64,000 bases of DNA, taken from Anolis carolinensis (lineage: Eukaryota). Location: positions 24,473,636 to 24,537,635 of the forward strand of contig NC_085841.1 in assembly GCF_035594765.1 (NCBI RefSeq). The letters are read 5' to 3'. Shown piece after piece: positions 2 through 48,626 of this stretch; within the stretch, counting starts at the first letter, position 1; each line of letters starts with the position of its first letter. Both the position numbers and the translations under genes were made by a program. Under the pieces are notes generated by a model that was not told the DNA's origin, searched no databases, and was given only the letters and a program-made list of their open reading frames with translations.

Positions 2-337
2 TGGAGAGGCTTGGTCGAACAGTGCCGTCGCCCAGTTGGCCGCTGGCCCGTCTAGAAGACTGTAAACCCATGCCACCTTGATGTCTTCTTGGGGAAATTC
101 GGCAGCACGGGCCTCTAGATAAGCTTGGCATTGGCGACGGAAAACATGAACCTTAGAAGCTTCTCCAGTAAACTTGGTTGGCAACGCCATGGCCGGTAGA
201 CGGATTCCGCGTTCCTTCAAACCTTTTATTTCTCCATCCTGGGCATTGAGCTTATCACGGATTCGGTCCACCTCATCCTTGTCGATGGTGTAGGTAATCG
301 GCTGGCCGCTCGGCCCAGGTACGACTCCGGTAGACAT
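2..337 (-). CDS. gag: Ty3/Gypsy (Tf1/sushi, RTL1/PEG10-like) Gag, N-terminal 112 codons, runs off the left edge
   Basis: Hand translation from ATG at 337: MSTGVVPGPSGQPITYTIDKDEVDRIRDKLNAQDGEIKGLKERGIRLPAMALPTKFTGEASKVHVFRRQCQAYLEARAAEFPQEDIKVAWVYSLLDGPAANWATALFDQASP. No stops. The P.KF.G...F..QC..Y...F.....KV.....LL.G.A..W pattern is the sushi-type capsid signature. Starts 42 nt downstream of the LTR. Confidence 0.9.
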   Translation of the reverse strand, partial: MSTGVVPGPSGQPITYTIDKDEVDRIRDKLNAQDGEIKGLKERGIRLPAMALPTKFTGEASKVHVFRRQCQAYLEARAAEFPQEDIKVAWVYSLLDGPAANWATALFDQASP

Positions 338-367
338 ACTGGCCTTGGTTAATTGGTGCTTAGGGTG

Positions 368-377
368 GCGGAGTCAA
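368..377 (-). promoter_or_regulatory. Primer-binding site, self-priming type
   Basis: Minus-strand TTGACTCCGC 2 nt after the LTR end. Perfectly complementary to the predicted transcript 5' end (922-913) and lacks the TGG of a tRNA PBS. Confidence 0.75.
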
Positions 378-379
378 AC

Positions 380-1351
380 TGTCACGACCCAGGCTACAGA
401 GCACCAATAACCATACGCAGAGGCCAGATTCTATCTAATATCTTTATTAAGGAATTATATAAAGTTAGTAAAAGCAAATGTAAAAGTTAGTCCAGAAGTA
501 GACCTTTCAGGGAAGGTCAAAATTAGTCCAAAGAAGCAATGTCCAATATGAAATATTAAGGTCCAAAGTTGTAATCCAATAACCGAAACACTCACTTTGC
601 CAGGCAAAGTGAGGGGAGATGACAAGGTCCTTTAGTCCATAAACTTGAGTAAGGCTAGGAAATAACTTGATACTTGAACAAGGCTTAAAACGTGGAACAA
701 GGTAACTAGGAACAAGAACAAGGTCCGTGGAATAACTTGGTAAAATCCGTGGAACAAGGCAAGGATTGGTCCTGGGAAACAAGGCAAAGTCCGTGGATAA
801 ACAAAGGCTGGGAAGCAAGGCGAAGGCTGGAAAGCAGGGCTAGGCTTGAGCAGGAGCGAGGCTTGAATCGGAGCGCGCTGTCCAGACACAACTCGCTCCG
901 TAGGCTGACGAATTGACTCCGCGAAGTTACTACGCGGGCAAAACACCTATATAGAGTCTAACTTTCCCACCGATGCAGTTCTCTGGGAATCAGAAACGAA
1001 AGCCAAACTCTGAGACCAGATGTTAACCTCCTTAAAGATTCTCACGAGAAACAGTCTTAATTGGCTACATTCTTAGCTGCAATTCTTGCACTCCTGCGCG
1101 AAGTTGAATCCAAACTTCTCTGTTGTTTACAAAACTCCCGGCGCAAGAACACGGGAGAAATAGGCTCTGGGGTTGTTTGACATACTTCTGGGAGACAACT
1201 TTCTTGCAGGTGCAAGGTTCCCAGATCGGCCTGGGAAAGATCTGGCTGAGAGGAATCCAGTTCAGACTGGGAAGGTAAAAAACCCAAGTTTTCATCTTCA
1301 TCAGGAATTACAGTGTCCTGAGCAGGACTACAAGGCCCATGGGTCATCACA
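380..1351 (-). mobile_element. Gypsy 5' LTR (972 bp)
   Basis: TG...CA termini (tgtcacgacc...gtcatcaca), minus-strand TATATA at 953-948, AATAAA at 448-443, abuts PBS and gag, homologous to the solo LTR at 45752. Confidence 0.92.
1057..1347 (-). CDS. U3-encoded reading frame (96 aa), probably the Pol C-terminal tail extending into the LTR
   Basis: MTHGPCSP...DEDENLGF...RRSARIAAKNVAN; homologous open frame in the second LTR with synonymous substitutions and an in-frame indel. Confidence 0.6.
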   Translation of the reverse strand: MTHGPCSPAQDTVIPDEDENLGFLPSQSELDSSQPDLSQADLGTLHLQESCLPEVCQTTPEPISPVFLRREFCKQQRSLDSTSRRSARIAAKNVAN

Positions 1352-1829
1352 GCGATGCTCCTACGCCATCAACTCCGCTGGACTGGCCACGTTGTCCGAA
1401 TGCCCGATCACCGTCTCCCAAAGCAGTTATTCTACTCCGAACTCAAGAATGGGAAACGGAATGTTGGTGGGCAGGAAAAGAGATTTAAAGATGGGCTCAA
1501 AGCCAACCTTAAAAACTGTGGCATAGACACTGAGAACTGGGAAGCCCTGGCCCTTGATCGCTCTAATTGGAGGTCAGCTGTAACCAGCAGTGCTGCGGAG
1601 TTCGAAGAGGCACGAATGGAGGGTTTAAGGGAGAAACGTGCCAAGAGGAAGGAACGTCAAGCTAACCCCGACCGGGACCGCCTTCCACCTGGAAACCGAT
1701 GTCCTCACTGCGGGAGAATATGCGGGTCAAGAATAGGTCTCTTCAGCCACCTAAGAACCCACCCCCAAGACACCAAGGATGGAAGACAATCGTCCTCGAG
1801 CTATGAGGGGTCGCCTAAGTAAGTAAGTA
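1352..1829 (+). mobile_element. RTE-clade LINE 3' end, the target of the Gypsy insertion
   Basis: ORF 1355-1822 LRWTGHVVRMPDHRLPKQLFYSEL...GGQEKRFKD with a C-terminal CPHC..H..H zinc finger and a (TAAG)n tail. Confidence 0.9.
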
Positions 1830-4385: not shown

Positions 4386-6993
4386 AGAACACTCAACATG
4401 AGGTTGATAGTGGCATTCTTAATGGCAAACCTGTGTTTGCCATAACATCTACTTCTGTCCCACGATCTGGGCCTAAGTCCAATTGTTAATTCCAGGTTGA
4501 GTTCACCCATTGAATCAGTGGGAATTTGGAGGTCATCACTTATGAAAGTTCATTTGATTCAATTGATGTATTCTAGTTAGGAATAGCAATTGGATTTCAC
4601 CCCAGTCTGGGCATCTCACTTATCATAAAGATTGCAATGGTTCTTGTTTTGGAAGCATTGTACGGGGAGTCCCATGAATGCCATTGATCTAGCTTGAGGA
4701 CAGAAAGATGCATCATTAAGTTTTACTAAACAATCAGGGCTTTCTGTTCTGGACCTACACTAGCCTGTCTCAAATATTGTGAGACACAATCCCAGTATCT
4801 ATATTCAAGAAAGGGTTAACTCTTAGTTTAGATGGTTTTGTACATAGAAAAGGGAATGGCTGCTATCTAACCTTTCATCTCAGGCAGCAAAATTTCTTGG
4901 GCCAGGCCTGTAAATAAAATGGAAGAATGTGAAAGTTCTAATATATGTTTGTGTGCAATTGACCAAGGAGATGTTTAGCTCATCAAGGTGGTGATAATTC
5001 TTCAGGCTGTCACTGGAATGTTTGTAATGCTGCTGATCAATCCATATGGGCATTAACAAATGGACTCATGTCAGGGTGATAGGACTACAAATTGGTGAAA
5101 TCATCCAGATAATTGCTGAGTATGGAGCATGAGAAGTGGTTCTGGGCGCTGTGAATGTCTGAATTATAAATGTTAGAGAGATGCTCAATAGGGGCATGAA
5201 CTGTTTTCCTCAATCAGTTTTCCCCAACTTGATGCCACCCATCTCTTTTTAATTATGGCTCCTATCAGTCTCAAATAGGATAACCAAAGCTCATGTGAAG
5301 ATGGGAGCTGTAGTCCAAGTCACCTAGAAGTTTCTTGGGAAGTTACTGGGTGGTAAACAAATCATTTTTGTATGAATCAGAGCTTGAGCATGCTGAAGAA
5401 AATGGGTGAGCATCCTTTATCTGGAAATCTGAAACACTATAAAATCTGAAATTGTCGACATAATTGACATCTTTGCTTTCTGATTATCAATATACACAGA
5501 TTTGTTTCATGCCAAAAACCATTAAAAATCTTGTGTATAGAACTACCTTCAGGCTATGCATACAAAGCGTATAATAACATAAATGCATTTCATGTCTGCA
5601 CCTGGGTCCTGGGATACAACCATTCATAGTTTGGAGAAAAAAATTAAAAAGTGAACGCTGATTTTGCAATTTTATATAAGAGACACTATTTTATCATAGT
5701 ATTGTATATAATGGGACTTGAGCATCCAAAGATTTTGGTATTAATGGAGAGTCTTGGAACAAAACTCTAACAGATACAAAGGGTACATTTTATAAATATT
5801 TCAAAAAAAATCCCAAACATTTCTGGTGCTAAGCATTTCAGATGATGGATACTCAACTTGTGTGATACATTTCTATATATTTAAAAGGACTTACAGCTAA
5901 TATCCCCTTGGCATCATTAAACCCTATATAGGTTATGTCTATGTGAAAAGTAGAAATATCGTAAAAACTATCAAAATAAAACAAATAAGTAGATTCAAAA
6001 TTAAGATTCTAGCCTATGAAAGATATAGCTTTCCTATTTAATGCATATTTTATTACTATGGTTTGTTTGGATTTTTTTTTCATTTTTAACAGCTGAAACA
6101 ATTGATCTCTTGTGAGACAACTGATAGCCAAGTATTGATAAAAAAGAGCAAGTTCCAGATGAATTAACCTGCCATATACTAATTCCAACCTCATAAAGTG
6201 CTTGGGAAAGGCAATTTAAAATGTTTGTAAAGTCAATGAAAGTTGAGATCCTTCATGCCAATATGCCTCCACTAATTAACTTGACTTTGTGAATGTGTAA
6301 TAGGTGTTCATGTTTAGCAAAAAAAAGTGAAGACTGAATATTCGAGAGCTTATTCATGCAAGGTTGGACCCAGGTTTAAAGCATACCTATTGTCATCAGT
6401 AGAATATTCATTATTACTTGATTCAACAAAATAAGCTTATACTGTCAATTTATTTCTCTCAGTTAGGTTCAAAGTAAGGTCCCTTTACATATTAATCCAG
6501 ACTAACAGCTATTTTGTTCAATCAAGTAATAACTAAAGTTCGTAAGTACACAAAGGTTTGCTTTATCAGATGTGTGCTGTGAATTTTCTAGGAACAGGCC
6601 TTGATAGTTATAAGTGAGCAGACTAGGGACTTCATCAGACTGTTGGGGGAGAACTGGAGAGGAATATCTTATCCTGTTCCCTCACGTCTTTCCCTATCAT
6701 CTGGGATGGCCATCCATCCCATGTCCTTTCACTGTCTTCCCCCCCCCCTCAAATCTTTCTTCCACTTTACCCCGTCTTTCTCTATCAGTAGTCGATTGAC
6801 ACTCGACTCCTGATAGAGGTATTTGGTCTCCATTTCCATACGCTTGGGAAATGGAGTGTCATGGAGTTCCATCAGAAGTGCTCTTACGTCGTTTGATGGC
6901 CTCCGTGGGATTCCCGTGAGGCTCCGTTTCCCAAGTGCATGGAAACTGAGCCTGAAAACTGTCTGATGGTCTCTGAATAGCAATAGATACATG

Positions 6994-9462: not shown

Positions 9463-10352
9463 AGAGTCATAGAAGAGACCAGAAGGACCATCCACTAGAG
9501 ACAAGGACCAGCCCCTGCCATGTAGGAATACCCAATTAAAACACTCCCGATAGATGGTCATCCAGCCACTGTTTAAAAGCCTCCAGAGGCAACTCCATAA
9601 CTTTTTAAGGCAGTGTATTCTATAGTCAAACAGCTCTTGCCACCAGGAAGTTCTAAATGTTTAGGTGAACTATATTTTCCTGCAGCTTGAGTCCACTATT
9701 CCATTTCCTAGTCTCTAAAGGTAAAGGTAAAGGTAAAGGTTTTCCCTAACTTTATGTCCAGTCGTGTCCGACTCTGGGTGTTGGTGCTCATCTCCATTTC
9801 TAAGCCGAAGAGCCGGCGTTGTCCGTAGACACCTCCAAGGTCATGTGGCCGGCATGATTGCATGGAATGCCGTTACCTTCTCGTCGAAGCAGTACCTATT
9901 GATCTACTCACATTTGCATGTTTTCGAACTGCTAGGTTGGCAGAAGCTGGAGCTAACAGCGGGTGCTCACGCCGCTCCTGGGATTTGACCCTGGGACCTT
10001 TCAGTCTGCAAGTTCAGCAGCTCAGCGCTTTAACACACTGAGCCACCGGAGGCTCCTAGTCTCTAGAGTAACAGAAAATAAGTTTGTCCCTTCCCCAATA
10101 TGACATTCTTTTCTATTTCAACATACCTATCAAGTCCCTTCTCAACCTTCTCTTCTCCAAGCTCTTCTCCCCATGCTGCTCCACATAGGGCTTGGCTTCC
10201 AGACTGTTGACCACTTCAGTTGCCCTTCTCTGAACATTTTCCAGCTTATTAATATCCTTATTGAATTGTCTGAAACTGGGCATGGTCTTCCAGGTGAGGT
10301 CTAACCAAAGCAGAATAAGGTGGCACTATGACTTCCCTTGATCTAGACACAA
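9463..10352 (-). mobile_element. Degraded CR1 3' end interrupted by a Sauria SINE
   Basis: Similar to the younger CR1 copies at 41897 and 45309; boundaries approximate. Confidence 0.75.
9718..10055 (-). mobile_element. Sauria SINE
   Basis: tRNA-like head GAGCCTCCGGTGGCTCAG, (ACCTTT)n tail, 10-bp TSD CTAGTCTCTA. Confidence 0.9.
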
Positions 10353-11419
10353 TATTCCTAAAGAAAGAAAAAGTGTATGTGTATATGTGAGGGGTGCGGG
10401 GAGAAAGAGAGGTTACAAAATGCCCTTTGGCTGCTCTTTACTGTGTGGTGAAATTTCACAATATCTCACCTCATATACTATATGGGCCCTGAAGGCAGCT
10501 GGAAAGATTTAGAAGAGAATGCCTCTTTTGGTATGAGATTGCCTCTGTGTTATAACCAATAGTGTTGTGGGGATGGAGAAATTGGCTGAAATGAAAAGCC
10601 CAGACCAATGTGTGGAATGGAAATGGAGCTCAAGGCAAAACGGCATCTTATTCGGGGACTTCTGCTAAAAGAATCAGCCACCTGACTGCTCATTAAGTAA
10701 CAGTAAATACAGGAAGGAGCCCAGATTTGCAGATGGCTCCAAATGATTATTTTGCGTTCTAATGAGATCACTGGTAGTGTCATAAGGTAAAAATACACCC
10801 CAGCCCACTTCCCTCTGAAGTATCAAAGCTTAAAGGTTTTTAAAAGAATGCTTTCATTTTGAGTCATCTTTTTCCAAGAGGATAAAGAAGAGTGCCATTA
10901 CAGAAGGAATATGACACTGGCTGTGTATGTATCCCATTTGCTCACATTTGGCACACAGGAGATATTAAGCGAGGGGTGAGTAATTGCATTTATTGTCCTA
11001 GCCTTTGGCTCCCTCTCTGTGACAACTATTTGATAACATCAAAACCAAGACAAGTACCAAAAAAGGAAAATGAACAACTTCAGATCTATTTAATAAATTG
11101 ATTCAAAATGTATCTCTCTCTGTTCAGGAAAGTCTCACATCAGGAAAGTAGTTTTTAAAGATTTTTTCTTCCTAGTTATTTTAAATTCCATCCCATATAG
11201 AGCCTGAACAAGACACTTTACCTGAGACAAAGGATGAGATGCCCAATGCTATTTTACCTGTGGTGTTGTTTACACATAAATAAATAAATGCGCCGACTTG
11301 TAATTTCCTGGTCTGCCATGATTGTGTTAACATCACACACATCCATATTAAATGGAAGTGAGAGGATTGTAAAGTCTCATACCAGACGCATGAAAGGATG
11401 ACCCTGCAATGATTGTGTG

Positions 11420-44796: not shown

Positions 44797-45751
44797 GTGA
44801 TCGTCATCCTCTTACTCTCCTCTTCCCACGGATCAAAATGCTTTTGTATACTTATGCAAGGTTTACTTGATCTGGTTGTTTCATTTCTCATGTGCATAGA
44901 AGGCCCCCATATTACAATGAGAGATTCATTCCAGGATCCTTAGTACAATATGATTTTCACAAATCTGGAACCCTATTTTTCTTAACTGAAATGAATAATG
45001 CTTAGGCATTGCTAAGTCCTCCTAATTCTATGGGATTCGTAGGTCTTCTTGTATAAATGAAACCATGTTCAATGAGCTCACATAACTAGCCCTACTGTAT
45101 TGTTAATTTTGGATAAAGCCCTGTTTCCCCCAAAATAAGACAGTGTCTTATATTATTTTTTGCTCCAAAAGATGCTTTAGAGCTTGTTTTCTGGGGCTGT
45201 CTTATTTTTCCAAATTGACTTTTAAATGAACTATAGGGCTCATTTTTGAAATAGGGCTTATATTTCGAGCATCCTCAGAAATGCTGAAAAATCTTCTTTT
45301 CGGGGTAGAATCATAGATCATAGAATCAGAGAGTTGGAAGACACCTCATGGGCCAGCCAGTCCAACCCCCTGCCAAGAAGCAGGAGGATGACATTAAAAG
45401 CACCCCCGACAGATGGCCATTCAGCCTCTGCTTAGAAACCTCCAAAGAAGGAGCCTCAACCACACTCTGGGGCAGAGAGTTCCACTGCCGAACAGCTCTC
45501 ACAGTGAGGAAGTTCTTCCTAATGTTCAGGTGGAATCTCCTTTCATGTAGTTTGAAGCCATTGTTCCACGTCTTATTCTCCAGGGCAGCAGAAAACAAGC
45601 TTGCTCCCTCCTCCCTATGACTTCCCCTCACATATTTGTACATGGCTATCATGTCTCCTCTCAGCCTTTTCTTCTGCAGGCTAAACATGCCCAGCTCTTT
45701 AAGCCACTCCTCGTAGGGCCTGTTCTCCAGACCCTTGATCATTTTAGTTGC

Positions 45752-46609
45752 TGTCAGGACCCAGGCTGCAGAGCACCAATAACCATGCGCAGAGACCAGA
45801 TTCTATCTAATATCTTTATTAAAGAATTATATAAAGTCAATAAAAACAAGTGAAGAATATAGTTCAGAAGCAGACCTTTCAGGAAAGGCCAAATATAGTC
45901 CAGGAAAATATTGTCCAATATAAGATATTAGAGTTCAAAGTTATAATCCATTAACCGAAACACACACTTTGCCAAGCAATAGTGTGGGGAGATGACAAGG
46001 TCTTTTAGTCCATTGAAGCTTGACAACAAGGCTGGATCATGAGCTTGATTCTTGGCTGGATCAAAGACTTGAAACGTGGCAACTTGAAGCATGAAACAAG
46101 GTCCGTGGCAAAACGTGAGACAAGGCAAGACTTGAAACTAGATCCGGGAAGCAGGGAACAAGGAGTACGAAGTCCACACACGATCTCTCTCTCCAGCTGA
46201 TCAATTGACTCCGCAAGGTTCCCCTTGCGGCAAAACCCCTATATAGGGTCTTGTTTTCCCGCCAACAGAACACTTTCCCTGGAGAACAAGAAGCGAAACC
46301 CAACTCTGTCCAGATGCATGACTCCTTAGAATTTCCCAAGGGAAGCAGACTTAATCAGCTAGTTGTTTGGCAGCGATTCTGAGACTCCGGCGATTAGCCT
46401 CCCTGACTCCTCTATCTCTATTATAATTGTCCTTTCGGGAAAACGGGGGAGAATTCTGCTCAAAGCTTGTTTGGGTAACTTCCTGAGGACAAACATCCTC
46501 CAGGTGGAGAGGCTCCGTTTCAAACTGAACCGGTGGAAATCCCATGTTTTCCTCCTCGTCTGCCACAATAGCACTAGGAACGGGACTACAAGGCCCATGA
46601 GACATCACA
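45752..46609 (-). mobile_element. Gypsy solo LTR (858 bp)
   Basis: TG...CA termini, perfect 5-bp TSD GTTGC (45747-45751 and 46610-46614), homologous to the LTR at 380-1351. Confidence 0.93.
46351..46605 (-). CDS. U3-encoded reading frame (84 aa), homologous to 1057-1347
   Basis: MSHGPCSP...DEEENMGF...[13 protein letters not shown]. Confidence 0.6.
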
Positions 46610-48626
46610 GTTGCCCTCCTCTGGACACTTTCCAGCTTATCAACATCTCCCTTCAATTGCGGTGCCCAAAATTGGACACAGTATTCCAGGTGTGGTCTGA
46701 CCAAGGCAGAATAGAGGGGGAGCCTGATTTCCCTGGATCTAGATGCTATACTCCTATTTATGCAGGCCAGAATCCCATTGGCCTTTTTAGCTGCCGCATC
46801 ACATTGTTGGCTCATGTTTAACTTATTGTCCATGAGGACTCCAAGATCTTTTTCACACATACTGCTGTTGAGCCAGGCGTCCCCCATTCTTTATCTTTGT
46901 ATTTCATTTTTTCTGCCTAAGTGAAATATCTTGCATTTGTCCCTGTTGAACTTCATTTTGTTAGTTTTGACCCATCTCTCGAATCTGTTAAGATTGTTTT
47001 GGATTCTGCTCCTGTCTTCTGGAGTATTGGTTATCCCTCCCAGTTTGGTGTCATCTGCAAACTTGATGATCGTGTCTTCTTGCCCTTCATCTAAGTCATT
47101 AATAAAGATGTTGAACAGAACTGGGCCCAGGACGGAACCCTGCGGAACTGGGCCCAGGACGGAACCTTTCTAGGATGAAGAAGACTCATTGATGAGCACT
47201 CTTTGGGTTCGTTCACTTAGCCAATTACAGATCCACCTAACTGTAGTTTTGCCTAGCCCATATTTGACTAGCTTGTTTGCAAGGTCATGCGGGACCTTGT
47301 CAAATCCAGATACGCTACATCCACGGCATTCCCCGTATCTACCCAGCTTGTAACTCTATTAGTCTGGTATGATTTGTTTTTTTATAAATCCATGTTGACT
47401 ATTAGAGATGACAGCATTTGTTTCTAAGTGTTTGCAGATCACTTCCTTAATTATCTTTTCCAGAATTTTGCCTGGTATTGATGTGAGGCTGACTGGACGG
47501 TAATTGTTTGGGTCATTCTTTTTTCCCTTCTTGAAGATAGGGACCACATTTGCCCTCCTCCAATCTGCTGGGACTTCTCCCGTTCTCCAAGAACTCTCAA
47601 AGATGATTGCCAGTCATTCCAAAATAACTTCTAGTTCCTTCAATACTCTTGGATGTAGTGGATCCGACCCTGGGGACTTGAATTTGTTTAGAGCGACCAG
47701 GTGTTTCTGGGTAGGTTTTATTTTGGGGAAAACAGGGATGGTTTATTGAAACATGTTGGACTGCTCTTTTTTGTGGTGACAGAACCTATCTCTATTCTTT
47801 TTATGTATTTTTACCTCTGAACTTTCTGTTAAAGGGTTAATGCCCAGAAACACATCTTCTTCAATGAGTCAGGTACAATGAATACAGTAGGGTTTTGTCC
47901 AAGTAAACATGTATAGCAGTGCATAGGTCAAGCCATTCTTCTGTTACTGAATTACTTTACTGAGTTACTTTCATTTTTTAAAAGTTATAGTTTGCTTTAA
48001 GAACATCTAGACATGAGCGAAGTAATCTAAGCATCAAGAGCATACCTTCTGTCCTTCTGTGCTTTGGAAGATGATGATTTATTTTATTTTTTTTAGAAGT
48101 AGGACTATATATACTGGAATTCCTGAGTAGCAGAATTTATGCTTTAGAAAAACAATAAAGATATTAAAGGAATTGGTGGTCTGGATTTCCAGGAATCCTC
48201 TCAAACTATATATGCAAAGGAGAAATCATTGTGGTTGAGATGCCTTGGTTATTGATGTTGGCAAAGAAAGATATTCTTATCTCCTCTATTTCACCTTGGT
48301 TGGTTCAGTTTTTAGTGAAATTGCCTGAAGTGGATTTTGTATTTTTTAATGAAAAACAATGAAAAGCAGTTCATCATCATATTTTAATTTATTAAACTAA
48401 GGCTGAAATCCTGTGCACAGTTTCCTGAGATCATGTGCCACGGAACTCAATGAGACATTTGCAGGGGATAGTTCCAGTTAATCCTTCATTGGATTGCCGT
48501 GAGTTTTCCAGGCTGTATGGCCATGTTCCAGAAGCATTCTCTCCAACGGCAAGACCAGATCTCCCAATTTAGGAGGGACAAACCTGATAAATCTATGTGA
48601 TCCCACTTTAAAAATGTCCTCGTTTC

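What the first reader, a model, noticed from the sequence alone, without database searches (positions are those of the whole stretch)
1057..1350. Gypsy LTR U3 carries a conserved reading frame ending in an HMGN-like RRSxRI motif
Seen: two diverged LTRs (380-1351, 45752-46609) both have an open frame from LTR base 2 (T|GTG ATG) to an aligned TAA. Conserved blocks: HGPCSP, DE.EN.GF.P.Q.E, LHL...C..EV.QT..E..SP.F.R and RRS(A/L)RIAAK. The 12-codon length difference is in frame. In the terminal motif most identical residues use different codons (agg/cgg, att/atc, gca/gct, gct/gcc, aag/aaa, gcc/gct), which is what protein-level purifying selection looks like in a normally non-coding region. Established: RRSARL is the core nucleosome-binding motif of HMGN proteins, an arginine anchor for the H2A-H2B acidic patch, and some retroelement pol ORFs overlap the 3' LTR. 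Inference: this is either an integrase C-terminal tail (acidic linker plus arginine anchor) read through the PPT into U3 that tethers the intasome to nucleosomes, or a separate LTR microprotein. It could be an undescribed chromatin-tethering module of squamate sushi-type elements, with copies spread by solo LTRs.
Basis: partly seen in the sequence, partly recalled or inferred. Interest (0 to 1): 0.82.

Follow-up and report, generated by a model that had tools for sequence, protein, structure and literature searches.

The report
LTR-encoded integrase tail, HMGN-like end
The open frame at the start of these two lizard retrotransposon LTRs is a silent copy of the last 85-97 codons of the element's own integrase, which reads past the polypurine tract into the LTR; this tail ends in the RRSAR peptide that HMGN, Dsup and yeast Dot5 use to grip nucleosomes, but binding by the tail itself is untested.

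Summary
Two diverged minus-strand LTRs (380-1351, a 5' LTR followed by gag; 45752-46609, a solo LTR with GTTGC target duplication) each carry an open frame from LTR base 2 to an aligned TAA.

Evidence for a selected reading frame:
- dN/dS is 0.24-0.39 in this frame and 0.7-1.2 in the other two.
- The only indel is 36 nt, so it stays in frame.
- The RRSxRIAAK block differs almost only at synonymous sites.

Evidence that it is an integrase tail, not a microprotein:
- A full-length relative in the green anole (L001) shows one continuous frame: integrase SH3 domain, chromodomain, PPT-encoded linker, then this tail.
- Anolis protein P0011 shows the same continuous frame.

Wider context:
- Pol ORFs running into the 3' LTR are known in plant CRM/Bingo chromoviruses.
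- The terminal motif matches HMGN (RRSARLSA) and yeast Dot5 (RRSARIAT), both shown by experiment to bind the nucleosome acidic patch.
- New here: related elements with tails of only 18-22 LTR codons also end in RRSARIAARV or RRSQRLATRDSL.

Nucleosome binding by the tail remains an inference. This scan has already reported the same tail on other DNA of this genome (s1-519628, s1-519684, s1-539920, s1-574257). My tests agree with those reports.

The parts
380..1351 (-). LTR_A, the 5' LTR of a chromovirus-type Ty3/gypsy element whose body runs leftward off the window
   Evidence: TGTGATG...GTCGTGACA termini. It is followed on the minus strand by a PBS-like region and the gag ATG at 337. It is homologous to LTR_B and to both L001 LTRs.
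1057..1350 (-). Silent U3 copy of the integrase tail reading frame (97 codons plus TAA), starting at LTR base 2
   Evidence: Translation. dN/dS 0.30-0.39 against copies B and C. Homologous tails sit at the C-terminus of integrase-chromodomain ORFs.
1072..1098 (-). RRSARIAAK, the HMGN-like motif (codons 85-93 of the tail)
   Evidence: RRSAR is identical to the HMGN core resolved on the acidic patch (PMC12487698). 7 of 8 residues match the Dot5 motif RRSARIAT (PMC13347269).
1279..1302 (-). DEDENLGF, a conserved acidic block ending in GF (codons 17-24)
   Evidence: Conserved as DE[DE]EN[LMF]GF in all copies, with synonymous differences between copies.
943..957 (-). Conserved TATA-like box (CTATATAGG) about 100 bp downstream of the tail's stop codon. 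This places the tail frame in U3 (inferred).
   Evidence: Invariant block in the LTR_A/LTR_B alignment. No transcript data.
2..337 (-). N-terminal 112 codons of gag, cut off by the window edge
   Evidence: Open frame with a sub-threshold Pfam DUF4939 (PEG10/RTL-type gag) match, E 5e-6, 26.7 bits against a cut-off of 29.
45752..46609 (-). LTR_B, a solo LTR of a sister subfamily, flanked by the 5-bp target duplication GTTGC (45747-45751 and 46610-46614)
46351..46608 (-). Silent U3 copy of the integrase tail frame (85 codons plus TAA)
   Evidence: By my count from the sequences returned, it differs at 9 of 85 residues (about 89% identical) from the tail at the C-terminus of Anolis integrase-chromodomain protein P0011.
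46366..46392 (-). RRSLRIAAK, the same motif with Leu at the variable fourth position
   Evidence: P0011 of the same subfamily has RRSARIAAK.

Best explanation
The frame is the 3' end of the element's gag-pol ORF. In this group of vertebrate chromoviruses the integrase does not stop after its chromodomain. It reads through the polypurine tract, which encodes a Gly/Arg/Glu linker, and enters U3 of the 3' LTR at base 2. This adds an 83-97-residue tail that is probably disordered. Reverse transcription copies U3 to the 5' LTR, and LTR-LTR recombination leaves solo LTRs. Every LTR therefore carries an untranslated copy of the tail codons, and that is what the window shows. The tail has an acidic N-terminal half with a conserved DE[DE]EN[LMF]GF block, and a basic end, RRS[A/L]RIAAK. 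The proposed mechanism is inferred, not shown. The terminal RRSxR[IL] would act as an arginine-anchor motif for the H2A-H2B acidic patch. Together with the chromodomain, which presumably reads a methylated H3 tail, it would give the intasome a two-point hold on a target nucleosome. [quoted passage not shown]
For: Shown by tool results:
- Frame continuity from integrase SH3 and chromodomain through the PPT into the LTR in L001. That element has a CTTAA target duplication, LTRs 98.7% identical and the order gag-PR-RT-RH-IN.
- The same continuity in Anolis proteins P0011 and P0004, in the Rhineura element L002 and in metagenome-derived elements L003 and L004.
- Purifying selection specific to this frame.
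- A profile search of 1.84 billion proteins found the tail only in Anolis. Its three strongest matches (P0001-P0003) are solo-LTR copies read into host or LINE gene models, and a fourth (P0004) follows a chromodomain.
- The motif recurs at the extreme C-terminus in distant relatives whose LTR-encoded tails are only 18-22 codons, ending RRSARIAARV in L003 and RRSQRLATRDSL in L004. P0071 ends RRSLRIQRRMNA.

From the literature:
- Cryo-EM resolves HMGN2 RRSAR on the acidic patch, with R23 and R26 as contacts (PMC12487698).
- Dot5 RRSARIAT binds the acidic patch, and its three arginines are required (PMC13347269).
- Plant CRM/Bingo gag-pol ORFs extend into the 3' LTR (PMC3605345).
Against: - The 3' LTR of the window's own element is outside the window, so continuity is inferred from relatives. 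No LTR_A-type copy with integrase context was found.
- L001's pol is broken by frameshifts upstream, so it is not itself an active copy.
- No binding data exist.
- The resemblance to HMGN is a 9-residue motif with no wider homology: Pfam gave nothing for the tail and the PDB sequence search gave nothing.
- The related Rhineura element has a different tail end (KRGRP...), so the motif is not universal.
- Only three independent DNA copies were available for dN/dS, and the alignment is protein-guided.
- A basic C-terminal peptide could equally be a nuclear localisation signal or a nucleic-acid contact.
Confidence: 0.8

Rival explanations
1. The tail is a real integrase extension, but the RRSxRIAAK end does something other than bind the acidic patch. 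Candidates are a nuclear or nucleolar localisation signal, a DNA/RNA contact in the intasome, or a kinase-regulated switch.
For: The last 25 residues carry net charge +3 to +5. Related fish and Rhineura integrases carry AT-hook-like RGRP motifs instead, which suggests that generic basic chromatin or DNA contacts are interchangeable here. No wider HMGN homology was found.
Against: The exact spacing R-R-S-x-R-[IL] is kept across lineages that share little else in the tail. The near-identical Dot5 peptide is shown by experiment to need these arginines for acidic-patch binding (PMC13347269).
Confidence: 0.3
2. The U3 frame is also, or mainly, expressed on a spliced Gag. A pol-excising intron would join the end of gag to the PPT linker, giving Gag the same tail, analogous to the foamy-virus Gag chromatin-binding sequence.
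For: In L001 a GT sits just before the gag stop codon (..CGG|GTGTAG). A pyrimidine-rich AG acceptor (..CCCTTCCAAG|CCG) lies at the chromodomain end. Both are in phase 0, so a Gag-tail fusion would be in frame. Earlier scan notes report such an intron in other anole Gypsy families (s1-517347, s1-552479).
Against: The donor is weak and is absent at that place in Rhineura L002. In L004 the best donor/acceptor pair would shift out of the tail frame after a few codons. No RNA evidence was available. The window itself does not contain these sites.
Confidence: 0.12
3. A separate LTR-encoded microprotein is translated from the ATG at codon 2, with solo LTRs as extra gene copies.
For: An ATG is present at codon 2 in all copies. 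Some solo-LTR copies are included in predicted host transcripts (P0001, P0003).
Against: GTGATG is part of the conserved LTR terminus, so the ATG is explained without a start-codon role. The frame lies upstream of the LTR's TATA box, so a 5' or solo LTR does not transcribe it from its own promoter. In every copy with upstream element sequence, the frame is continuous with integrase. The gene models that contain it are chimeras with LINE or host exons.
Confidence: 0.05
4. It is a chance open frame in non-coding U3, conserved for cis-regulatory reasons.
For: U3 holds enhancer and promoter elements. Only a few copies were compared.
Against: The constraint is frame-specific: dN/dS is 0.24-0.39 in frame against about 1 in the other frames. 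The only indel is in frame. Synonymous sites in the terminal motif are saturated. The ORF region is the least conserved part of the LTR at DNA level (61% against 86% at the 3' end), yet it stays open in all 4 DNA copies examined; 3 database proteins (P0001, P0002, P0011) also carry a full-length tail.
Confidence: 0.03

Closest known systems
Plant CRM and Bingo chromoviruses (gag-pol ORF extends into the 3' LTR; CR motif downstream of the PPT), PMC3605345 and PMC3059260
   Same: Same clade-level kind of element (chromovirus). Same architecture: the integrase C-terminal targeting region is encoded beyond the PPT inside the LTR.
   Different: In CRM the LTR-encoded part is a modified chromodomain (the CR motif). 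Here the canonical chromodomain lies upstream of the PPT, and the LTR encodes an extra acidic tail ending in an HMGN-like peptide. The host is a vertebrate, not a plant.
HMGN nucleosome-binding motif RRSARLSA and HMGN-like motifs of tardigrade Dsup (RRSSRLTS) and yeast Dot5 (RRSARIAT), PMC12487698 and PMC13347269
   Same: RRSAR is identical, and there are 7/8 matches to Dot5. The three arginines that contact the acidic patch are present and conserved. The motif sits in a region likely to be disordered.
   Different: There is no homology outside the motif, so this is a shared motif and not family membership. The motif sits at the extreme C-terminus of a retroelement integrase. Binding is untested.
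MLV integrase C-terminal tail peptide that binds the BET ET domain (PMC4027182)
   Same: A short unstructured peptide at the very end of integrase acts as the chromatin tether that biases integration.
   Different: MLV tethers through a host reader protein. Here the proposed contact is directly with the histone surface, and the tail is encoded in the LTR.
Prototype foamy virus Gag chromatin-binding sequence and KSHV LANA (arginine-anchor binding to the H2A-H2B acidic patch), PMC6282019 and PMC12125541
   Same: A retroelement-encoded arginine-anchor peptide proposed to dock on the acidic patch and influence integration.
   Different: In PFV the peptide is in Gag, not integrase, and its sequence is unrelated to RRSxR[IL].
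LEDGF/p75 IBD-binding motif (E/D-x-E-x-F-x-G-F; consensus quoted from my own knowledge of Tesina et al. 2015, not re-read here)
   Same: An acidic run followed by x-G-F: DE[DE]EN[LMF]GF. A Podarcis relative (P0017) has the full EEEEFIGF.
   Different: In this family the first Phe of the consensus is Asn, so a defining residue is missing.

Membership tests
Chromovirus (Ty3/gypsy LTR retrotransposon with chromodomain integrase) | LTRs with TG...CA ends and a short target-site duplication | tested here: met
   LTR_B has a GTTGC duplication. L001 has a CTTAA duplication and 98.7% identical LTRs.
Chromovirus (Ty3/gypsy LTR retrotransposon with chromodomain integrase) | Gene order gag, PR, RT, RNase H, IN, with a chromodomain at the integrase C-terminus | tested here: met
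   Met in relatives L001 and L004. The window holds only the gag N-terminus (sub-threshold DUF4939 match), so membership of the window's own element is by LTR and tail homology.
pol ORF extending into the 3' LTR (as in plant CRM/Bingo) | Uninterrupted frame from integrase across the PPT into the LTR | tested here: met
   L001 9767-10588, with the LTR starting at 10336. Also P0011, L002 and L003/L004. Not testable for the window's own element.
HMGN protein family (Pfam HMG14_17) | Sequence homology to the nucleosome-binding domain beyond the core peptide | tested here: not met
   No Pfam family at E up to 1. No PDB chain at E up to 10.
HMGN-like acidic-patch motif (HMGN, Dsup, Dot5) | R-R-S-x-R-[L/I], with arginines at positions 1, 2 and 5 | tested here: met
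   RRSARIAAK (A, L001, P0001, P0011) and RRSLRIAAK (B). Compared with the motifs quoted in PMC12487698 and PMC13347269.
HMGN-like acidic-patch motif (HMGN, Dsup, Dot5) | Binding to nucleosomes that depends on the H2A-H2B acidic patch | not testable with these tools
   No histone sequence was available by reference for the complex tool. PMC12487698 reports that AlphaFold 3 models of HMGN2-nucleosome are low-confidence and mis-oriented.
LEDGF IBD-binding motif | Both phenylalanines of F-x-G-F, preceded by acidic residues | tested here: not met
   The block is DE[DE]EN[LMF]GF, so the first Phe is Asn in all copies of this family. The acidic run and the G-F are present.
Separate LTR-encoded accessory gene (MMTV sag / HIV nef type) | Own start codon and a transcript independent of pol | tested here: inconclusive
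   An ATG exists, but it is part of the conserved LTR terminus. The frame is continuous with integrase wherever upstream element sequence is present. No RNA data.

The most novel reading that the evidence does not exclude
RRSxR[IL] is an old, recurrent acidic-patch tether of vertebrate chromovirus integrases. It would work alongside the chromodomain as a two-point nucleosome reader. The stretch around the PPT/U3 boundary would then be a hot spot where lineages swap short chromatin-binding peptides: HMGN-like in anoles and in two metagenome-derived elements whose nearest named relatives are from frogs, AT-hook-like RGRP in many fishes and in Rhineura, and a LEDGF-motif-like FxGF in other lizards. 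This would be the first integrase known to dock directly on the histone acidic patch through a linear motif.
Probability: 0.35. Interest if true: 0.75.

Novelty: new variant of a known kind. Interest (0 to 1): 0.6.

Why it matters
How LTR retroelements choose integration sites is known for only a few systems: Ty1, Ty3 and Ty5, Tf1, MLV-BET, HIV-LEDGF and PFV Gag. A chromodomain integrase that also carries a peptide matching one with proven acidic-patch binding would be a compact, directly testable example of bivalent nucleosome targeting. It also shows that the 'non-coding' U3 of a vertebrate LTR is under protein-coding constraint. This matters for annotating LTRs, for reading selection signals in them, and for interpreting host gene models that have absorbed solo-LTR copies of the tail (P0001, P0003). 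The short-tail relatives narrow the functional element to about 10 residues, which makes peptide experiments simple.

Tried and rejected
- AlphaFold2 of the integrase C-terminus plus tail with a 5-sequence alignment gave mean pLDDT 39 and did not even fold the chromodomain. It says nothing about disorder or helicity of the tail.
- Pfam on the tails found no family. A PDB sequence search with the last 30 residues found no match.
- The look-up of encoding contigs had no record for P0004. For P0001 the gene range was too long to return DNA. Those copies therefore gave protein-level evidence only.
- The window holds no further copies of these LTRs or of the tail (blastn and tblastn).
- The LEDGF-motif reading of the acidic block was considered and rejected as a membership claim, because the first Phe is missing.
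- One LEDGF paper I opened did not state the consensus, so that consensus is quoted from memory.
- The chance-ORF and microprotein readings were rejected on frame-specific selection and on continuity with integrase.

Full report
WHAT IS IN THE WINDOW

LTR_A (380-1351) starts TGTGATG and ends GTCGTGACA. On the minus strand it is followed by a PBS-like stretch and an ATG at 337 that opens a gag frame. This frame has 112 codons before the window edge and gives a sub-threshold Pfam DUF4939 match, E 5e-6. LTR_A is therefore the 5' LTR of an element whose body and 3' LTR lie left of the window.

LTR_B (45752-46609) is a solo LTR flanked by a 5-bp GTTGC duplication. The window holds no other copies of these LTRs.

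A conserved CTATATAGG box lies about 100 bp downstream of the frame's stop codon, and an AATAAA lies near the far end. The frame therefore sits in U3. This placement is inferred from sequence; there are no transcript data.

CHECKING THE OBSERVATION

- The frame from LTR base 2 is open for 97 codons in A and 85 in B, and ends at an aligned TAA.
- A frame of this length stays open in fewer than 1% of shuffles of either sequence.
- In the MAFFT DNA alignment, which takes no account of frame, the ORF has a single 36-nt gap. The remaining two thirds of the LTR have nine indels, seven of them not multiples of three.
- The ORF region is the least conserved part of the LTR at DNA level (61% identity, against 86% at the R/U5 end), yet it stays open.
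- With a third independent copy from locus L001, pairwise Nei-Gojobori dN/dS is 0.24-0.39 in this frame and 0.69-1.21 in the other two. No bootstrap replicate reached 1.
- In the nine codons RRSxRIAAK, 5-6 of about 7 synonymous sites differ, but only 0-2 of about 20 non-synonymous sites do. This block was picked after seeing the data.

The limits are three DNA copies and a protein-guided codon alignment.

WHAT THE FRAME IS

A profile of the two peptides searched against 1.84 billion representative proteins gave six hits. Every hit that matched the tail itself was from Anolis carolinensis.

- Three are solo-LTR copies read into chimeric gene models: one with a LINE reverse transcriptase, one with a C19orf12-like gene, and one uncharacterised locus.
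- The fourth, P0004, is a chromodomain followed by a Gly/Glu-rich linker and then the start of the LTR_B-type tail.

Searching with P0004 led to P0008, whose genomic locus L001 holds a full-length relative:

- 5' LTR at 4938-5843 and 3' LTR at 10336-11241.
- CTTAA target duplication, and LTRs 98.7% identical.
- Gene order gag (zinc knuckle), protease, RT, RNase H, integrase.
- Its pol is broken by frameshifts further upstream. The last piece, 9767-10588, is one open frame containing SH3_Tf2-1, Chromo, the linker encoded by the polypurine tract (...GEGLEGGDS) and then the tail. The tail starts VMPHGFCSP, contains DEDENMGF and ends RRSARIAAKQETD.
- The codon AGT spans the junction, with AG from the PPT and T as LTR base 1.

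Anolis protein P0011 (316 aa) shows the same uninterrupted run for the LTR_B subfamily. By my count from the returned sequences, its tail differs from LTR_B's at 9 of 85 residues (about 89% identical) and ends [13 protein letters not shown].

The frame in the window is thus a silent copy of the last 85-97 codons of integrase. Every LTR carries it, because U3 is duplicated at reverse transcription.

Continuity could not be tested for the window's own element. I also found no LTR_A-type copy with integrase context.

HOW WIDESPREAD THE ARCHITECTURE IS

- A Rhineura floridana relative (L002, LTRs 97.9% identical) also reads 88 codons into its LTR. Its tail differs: it is acidic and Ser/Asp-rich and ends KRGRPVSLRPKR, which looks like an AT hook.
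- Among the stored integrase-chromodomain relatives, many fish proteins carry PRGRGRPRR directly after the chromodomain, then a Gly run and a tail of about 22 residues ending SPEY.
- Two metagenome-derived elements have the PPT AGAAAGGGGGGTAC followed by an LTR starting TGTCATG or TGTCACG. Their LTR-encoded tails are only 18 and 22 codons and end RRSARIAARV and RRSQRLATRDSL. In L004 the contig wraps around, so both LTR ends can be seen. The nearest named relatives of these two elements are from frogs.
- A more distant protein, P0071, ends RRSLRIQRRMNA.

So RRSxR[IL] at the extreme C-terminus recurs in lineages that share almost nothing else in the tail. The shortest tails consist of little more than this motif. 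By rough composition arithmetic of my own, chance would give about 0.1 such occurrences in this set. This estimate is not a tool result.

LIKELY MECHANISM

Literature evidence on the motif:

- Cryo-EM resolves HMGN2 residues RRSAR on the H2A-H2B acidic patch. R23 contacts H2A E56 and H2B E113, and R26 acts as the arginine anchor. Phosphorylation of the serine is modelled to repel the patch (PMC12487698).
- Yeast Dot5 carries RRSARIAT. Its three arginines are needed for nucleosome binding, and acidic-patch mutations abolish that binding (PMC13347269).

The tail's RRSARIAA matches Dot5 at 7 of 8 positions and has the HMGN RRSAR core.

The chromodomain upstream keeps aromatic residues at the three cage positions of HP1-type chromodomains (F, W and Y/F, seen). 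The cage assignment is from my own knowledge.

I therefore propose a two-point hold on the target nucleosome: the chromodomain on a methylated H3 tail, and the C-terminal arginine anchor on the acidic patch, joined by an acidic linker. This is an inference. I put it at about 0.45, against about 0.9 for the anatomy.

The second conserved block, DE[DE]EN[LMF]GF, resembles the LEDGF IBD-binding motif that earlier notes of this scan report in other anole Gypsy families. A Podarcis relative has the full EEEEFIGF. In this family the first Phe is Asn, so I do not file it under that motif.

RIVAL READINGS

- Separate microprotein: disfavoured. The ATG belongs to the conserved LTR terminus, the frame is upstream of the TATA box, and it is continuous with integrase wherever upstream element sequence exists.
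- Spliced Gag carrying the same tail: possible in L001, where a GT just before the gag stop and an AG acceptor at the chromodomain end are both in phase 0. However, the donor is weak and is absent at that place in L002, and in L004 the best sites would leave the tail frame. No RNA data were available.
- Basic end as a localisation signal or nucleic-acid contact: this cannot be excluded.

COMPARISON WITH WHAT IS KNOWN

Chromatin tethers on retroviral proteins are also known:

- the MLV integrase tail binding BET proteins (PMC4027182);
- the PFV Gag chromatin-binding sequence on the acidic patch (PMC6282019 and PMC12125541).

A full-text search found no paper linking an HMGN-like motif to a retrotransposon integrase; the papers that hold both terms are the Dsup and Dot5 studies.

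The tail is not an HMGN family member. There is no homology beyond the motif.

I rate it a new variant of a known kind.

EARLIER NOTES OF THIS SCAN

The same tail has been reported repeatedly on other DNA of this genome, with the same conclusion (s1-519628, s1-519684, s1-539920, s1-574257). My tests were run independently and agree. What this report adds is the check on these two particular LTRs and the short-tail relatives ending in the same motif.

WHAT DID NOT WORK

- The AlphaFold2 model was uninformative, with mean pLDDT 39.
- The PDB and Pfam searches of the tail were blank.
- No complex prediction was run, because no histone sequence was available by reference, and the cited cryo-EM paper reports that such models are unreliable for this motif.

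Noticed in passing
L003:500-567 and L004:4700-4788: Two metagenome-derived chromoviruses (ENA ERZ27260165 and ERZ27260041; nearest named relatives in frogs) have LTR-encoded integrase tails of only 18 and 22 codons, ending RRSARIAARV and RRSQRLATRDSL. The HMGN-like motif is therefore older and wider than the anole families, and about 10 residues may be the functional unit.
   Followed up: partly
L002:10579-10843 (Rhineura floridana): A related amphisbaenian chromovirus reads 88 codons into its 575-bp LTR. Its tail is Ser/Asp-rich and ends KRGRPVSLRPKR, an AT-hook-like peptide rather than RRSxR.
   Followed up: partly
Proteins P0034, P0045, P0088, P0094, P0106 and about 25 others: Fish chromovirus integrases carry a canonical-looking AT hook (PRGRGRPRR) directly after the chromodomain. 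This is followed by a Gly run and a short tail of about 22 residues ending SPEY, which probably also crosses into the LTR.
   Followed up: no
P0017 (Podarcis lilfordi), residues about 240-260: This lacertid integrase tail has DSEEEEFIGF, a full match to the LEDGF IBD-binding consensus. The anole family studied here has DE[DE]EN[LMF]GF at the corresponding place.
   Followed up: partly
L001:6866-6874 and L001:10262-10275: A GT just before the gag stop codon and a pyrimidine-rich AG acceptor at the end of the chromodomain are both in phase 0. A pol-excising splice would fuse Gag to the PPT linker and the U3 tail. The donor is not conserved in L002, and the equivalent sites in L004 would leave the tail frame.
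   Followed up: partly
It has an open minus-strand frame of about 110 codons that is Ser/Glu-rich. A PRRSRL peptide followed by a stop appears only in a different frame. It was not detected as homologous to LTR_A or LTR_B by blastn or tblastn.
   Followed up: partly
window 1355-1822 (+): A 155-codon ORF lies immediately beside LTR_A. By eye it resembles the C-terminal end of a LINE ORF2, with a Cys/His-containing end. The Gypsy element appears to have inserted into or next to an older LINE copy.
   Followed up: no
window 46351-46887 (-), and protein P0002: The tail frame of solo LTR_B happens to stay open upstream into the flanking repeat, giving a 178-codon ORF. P0002 is a database protein built the same way, a LINE RT read into a solo LTR. 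Such chimeras explain why the tail appears in predicted host proteins.
   Followed up: partly
P0003 (Anolis A0A803TQ79): Part of an LTR_A-type tail is annotated as the N-terminal exon of a C19orf12-like protein model. This may be exonisation of a solo LTR or an annotation artefact.
   Followed up: no
window 338-379 (-) and L001:5844-5880: The stretch just downstream of the 5' LTR (GTTTGACTCCGCCACCC...) is nearly identical between the window's element and L001, although their LTRs have diverged.
   Followed up: no
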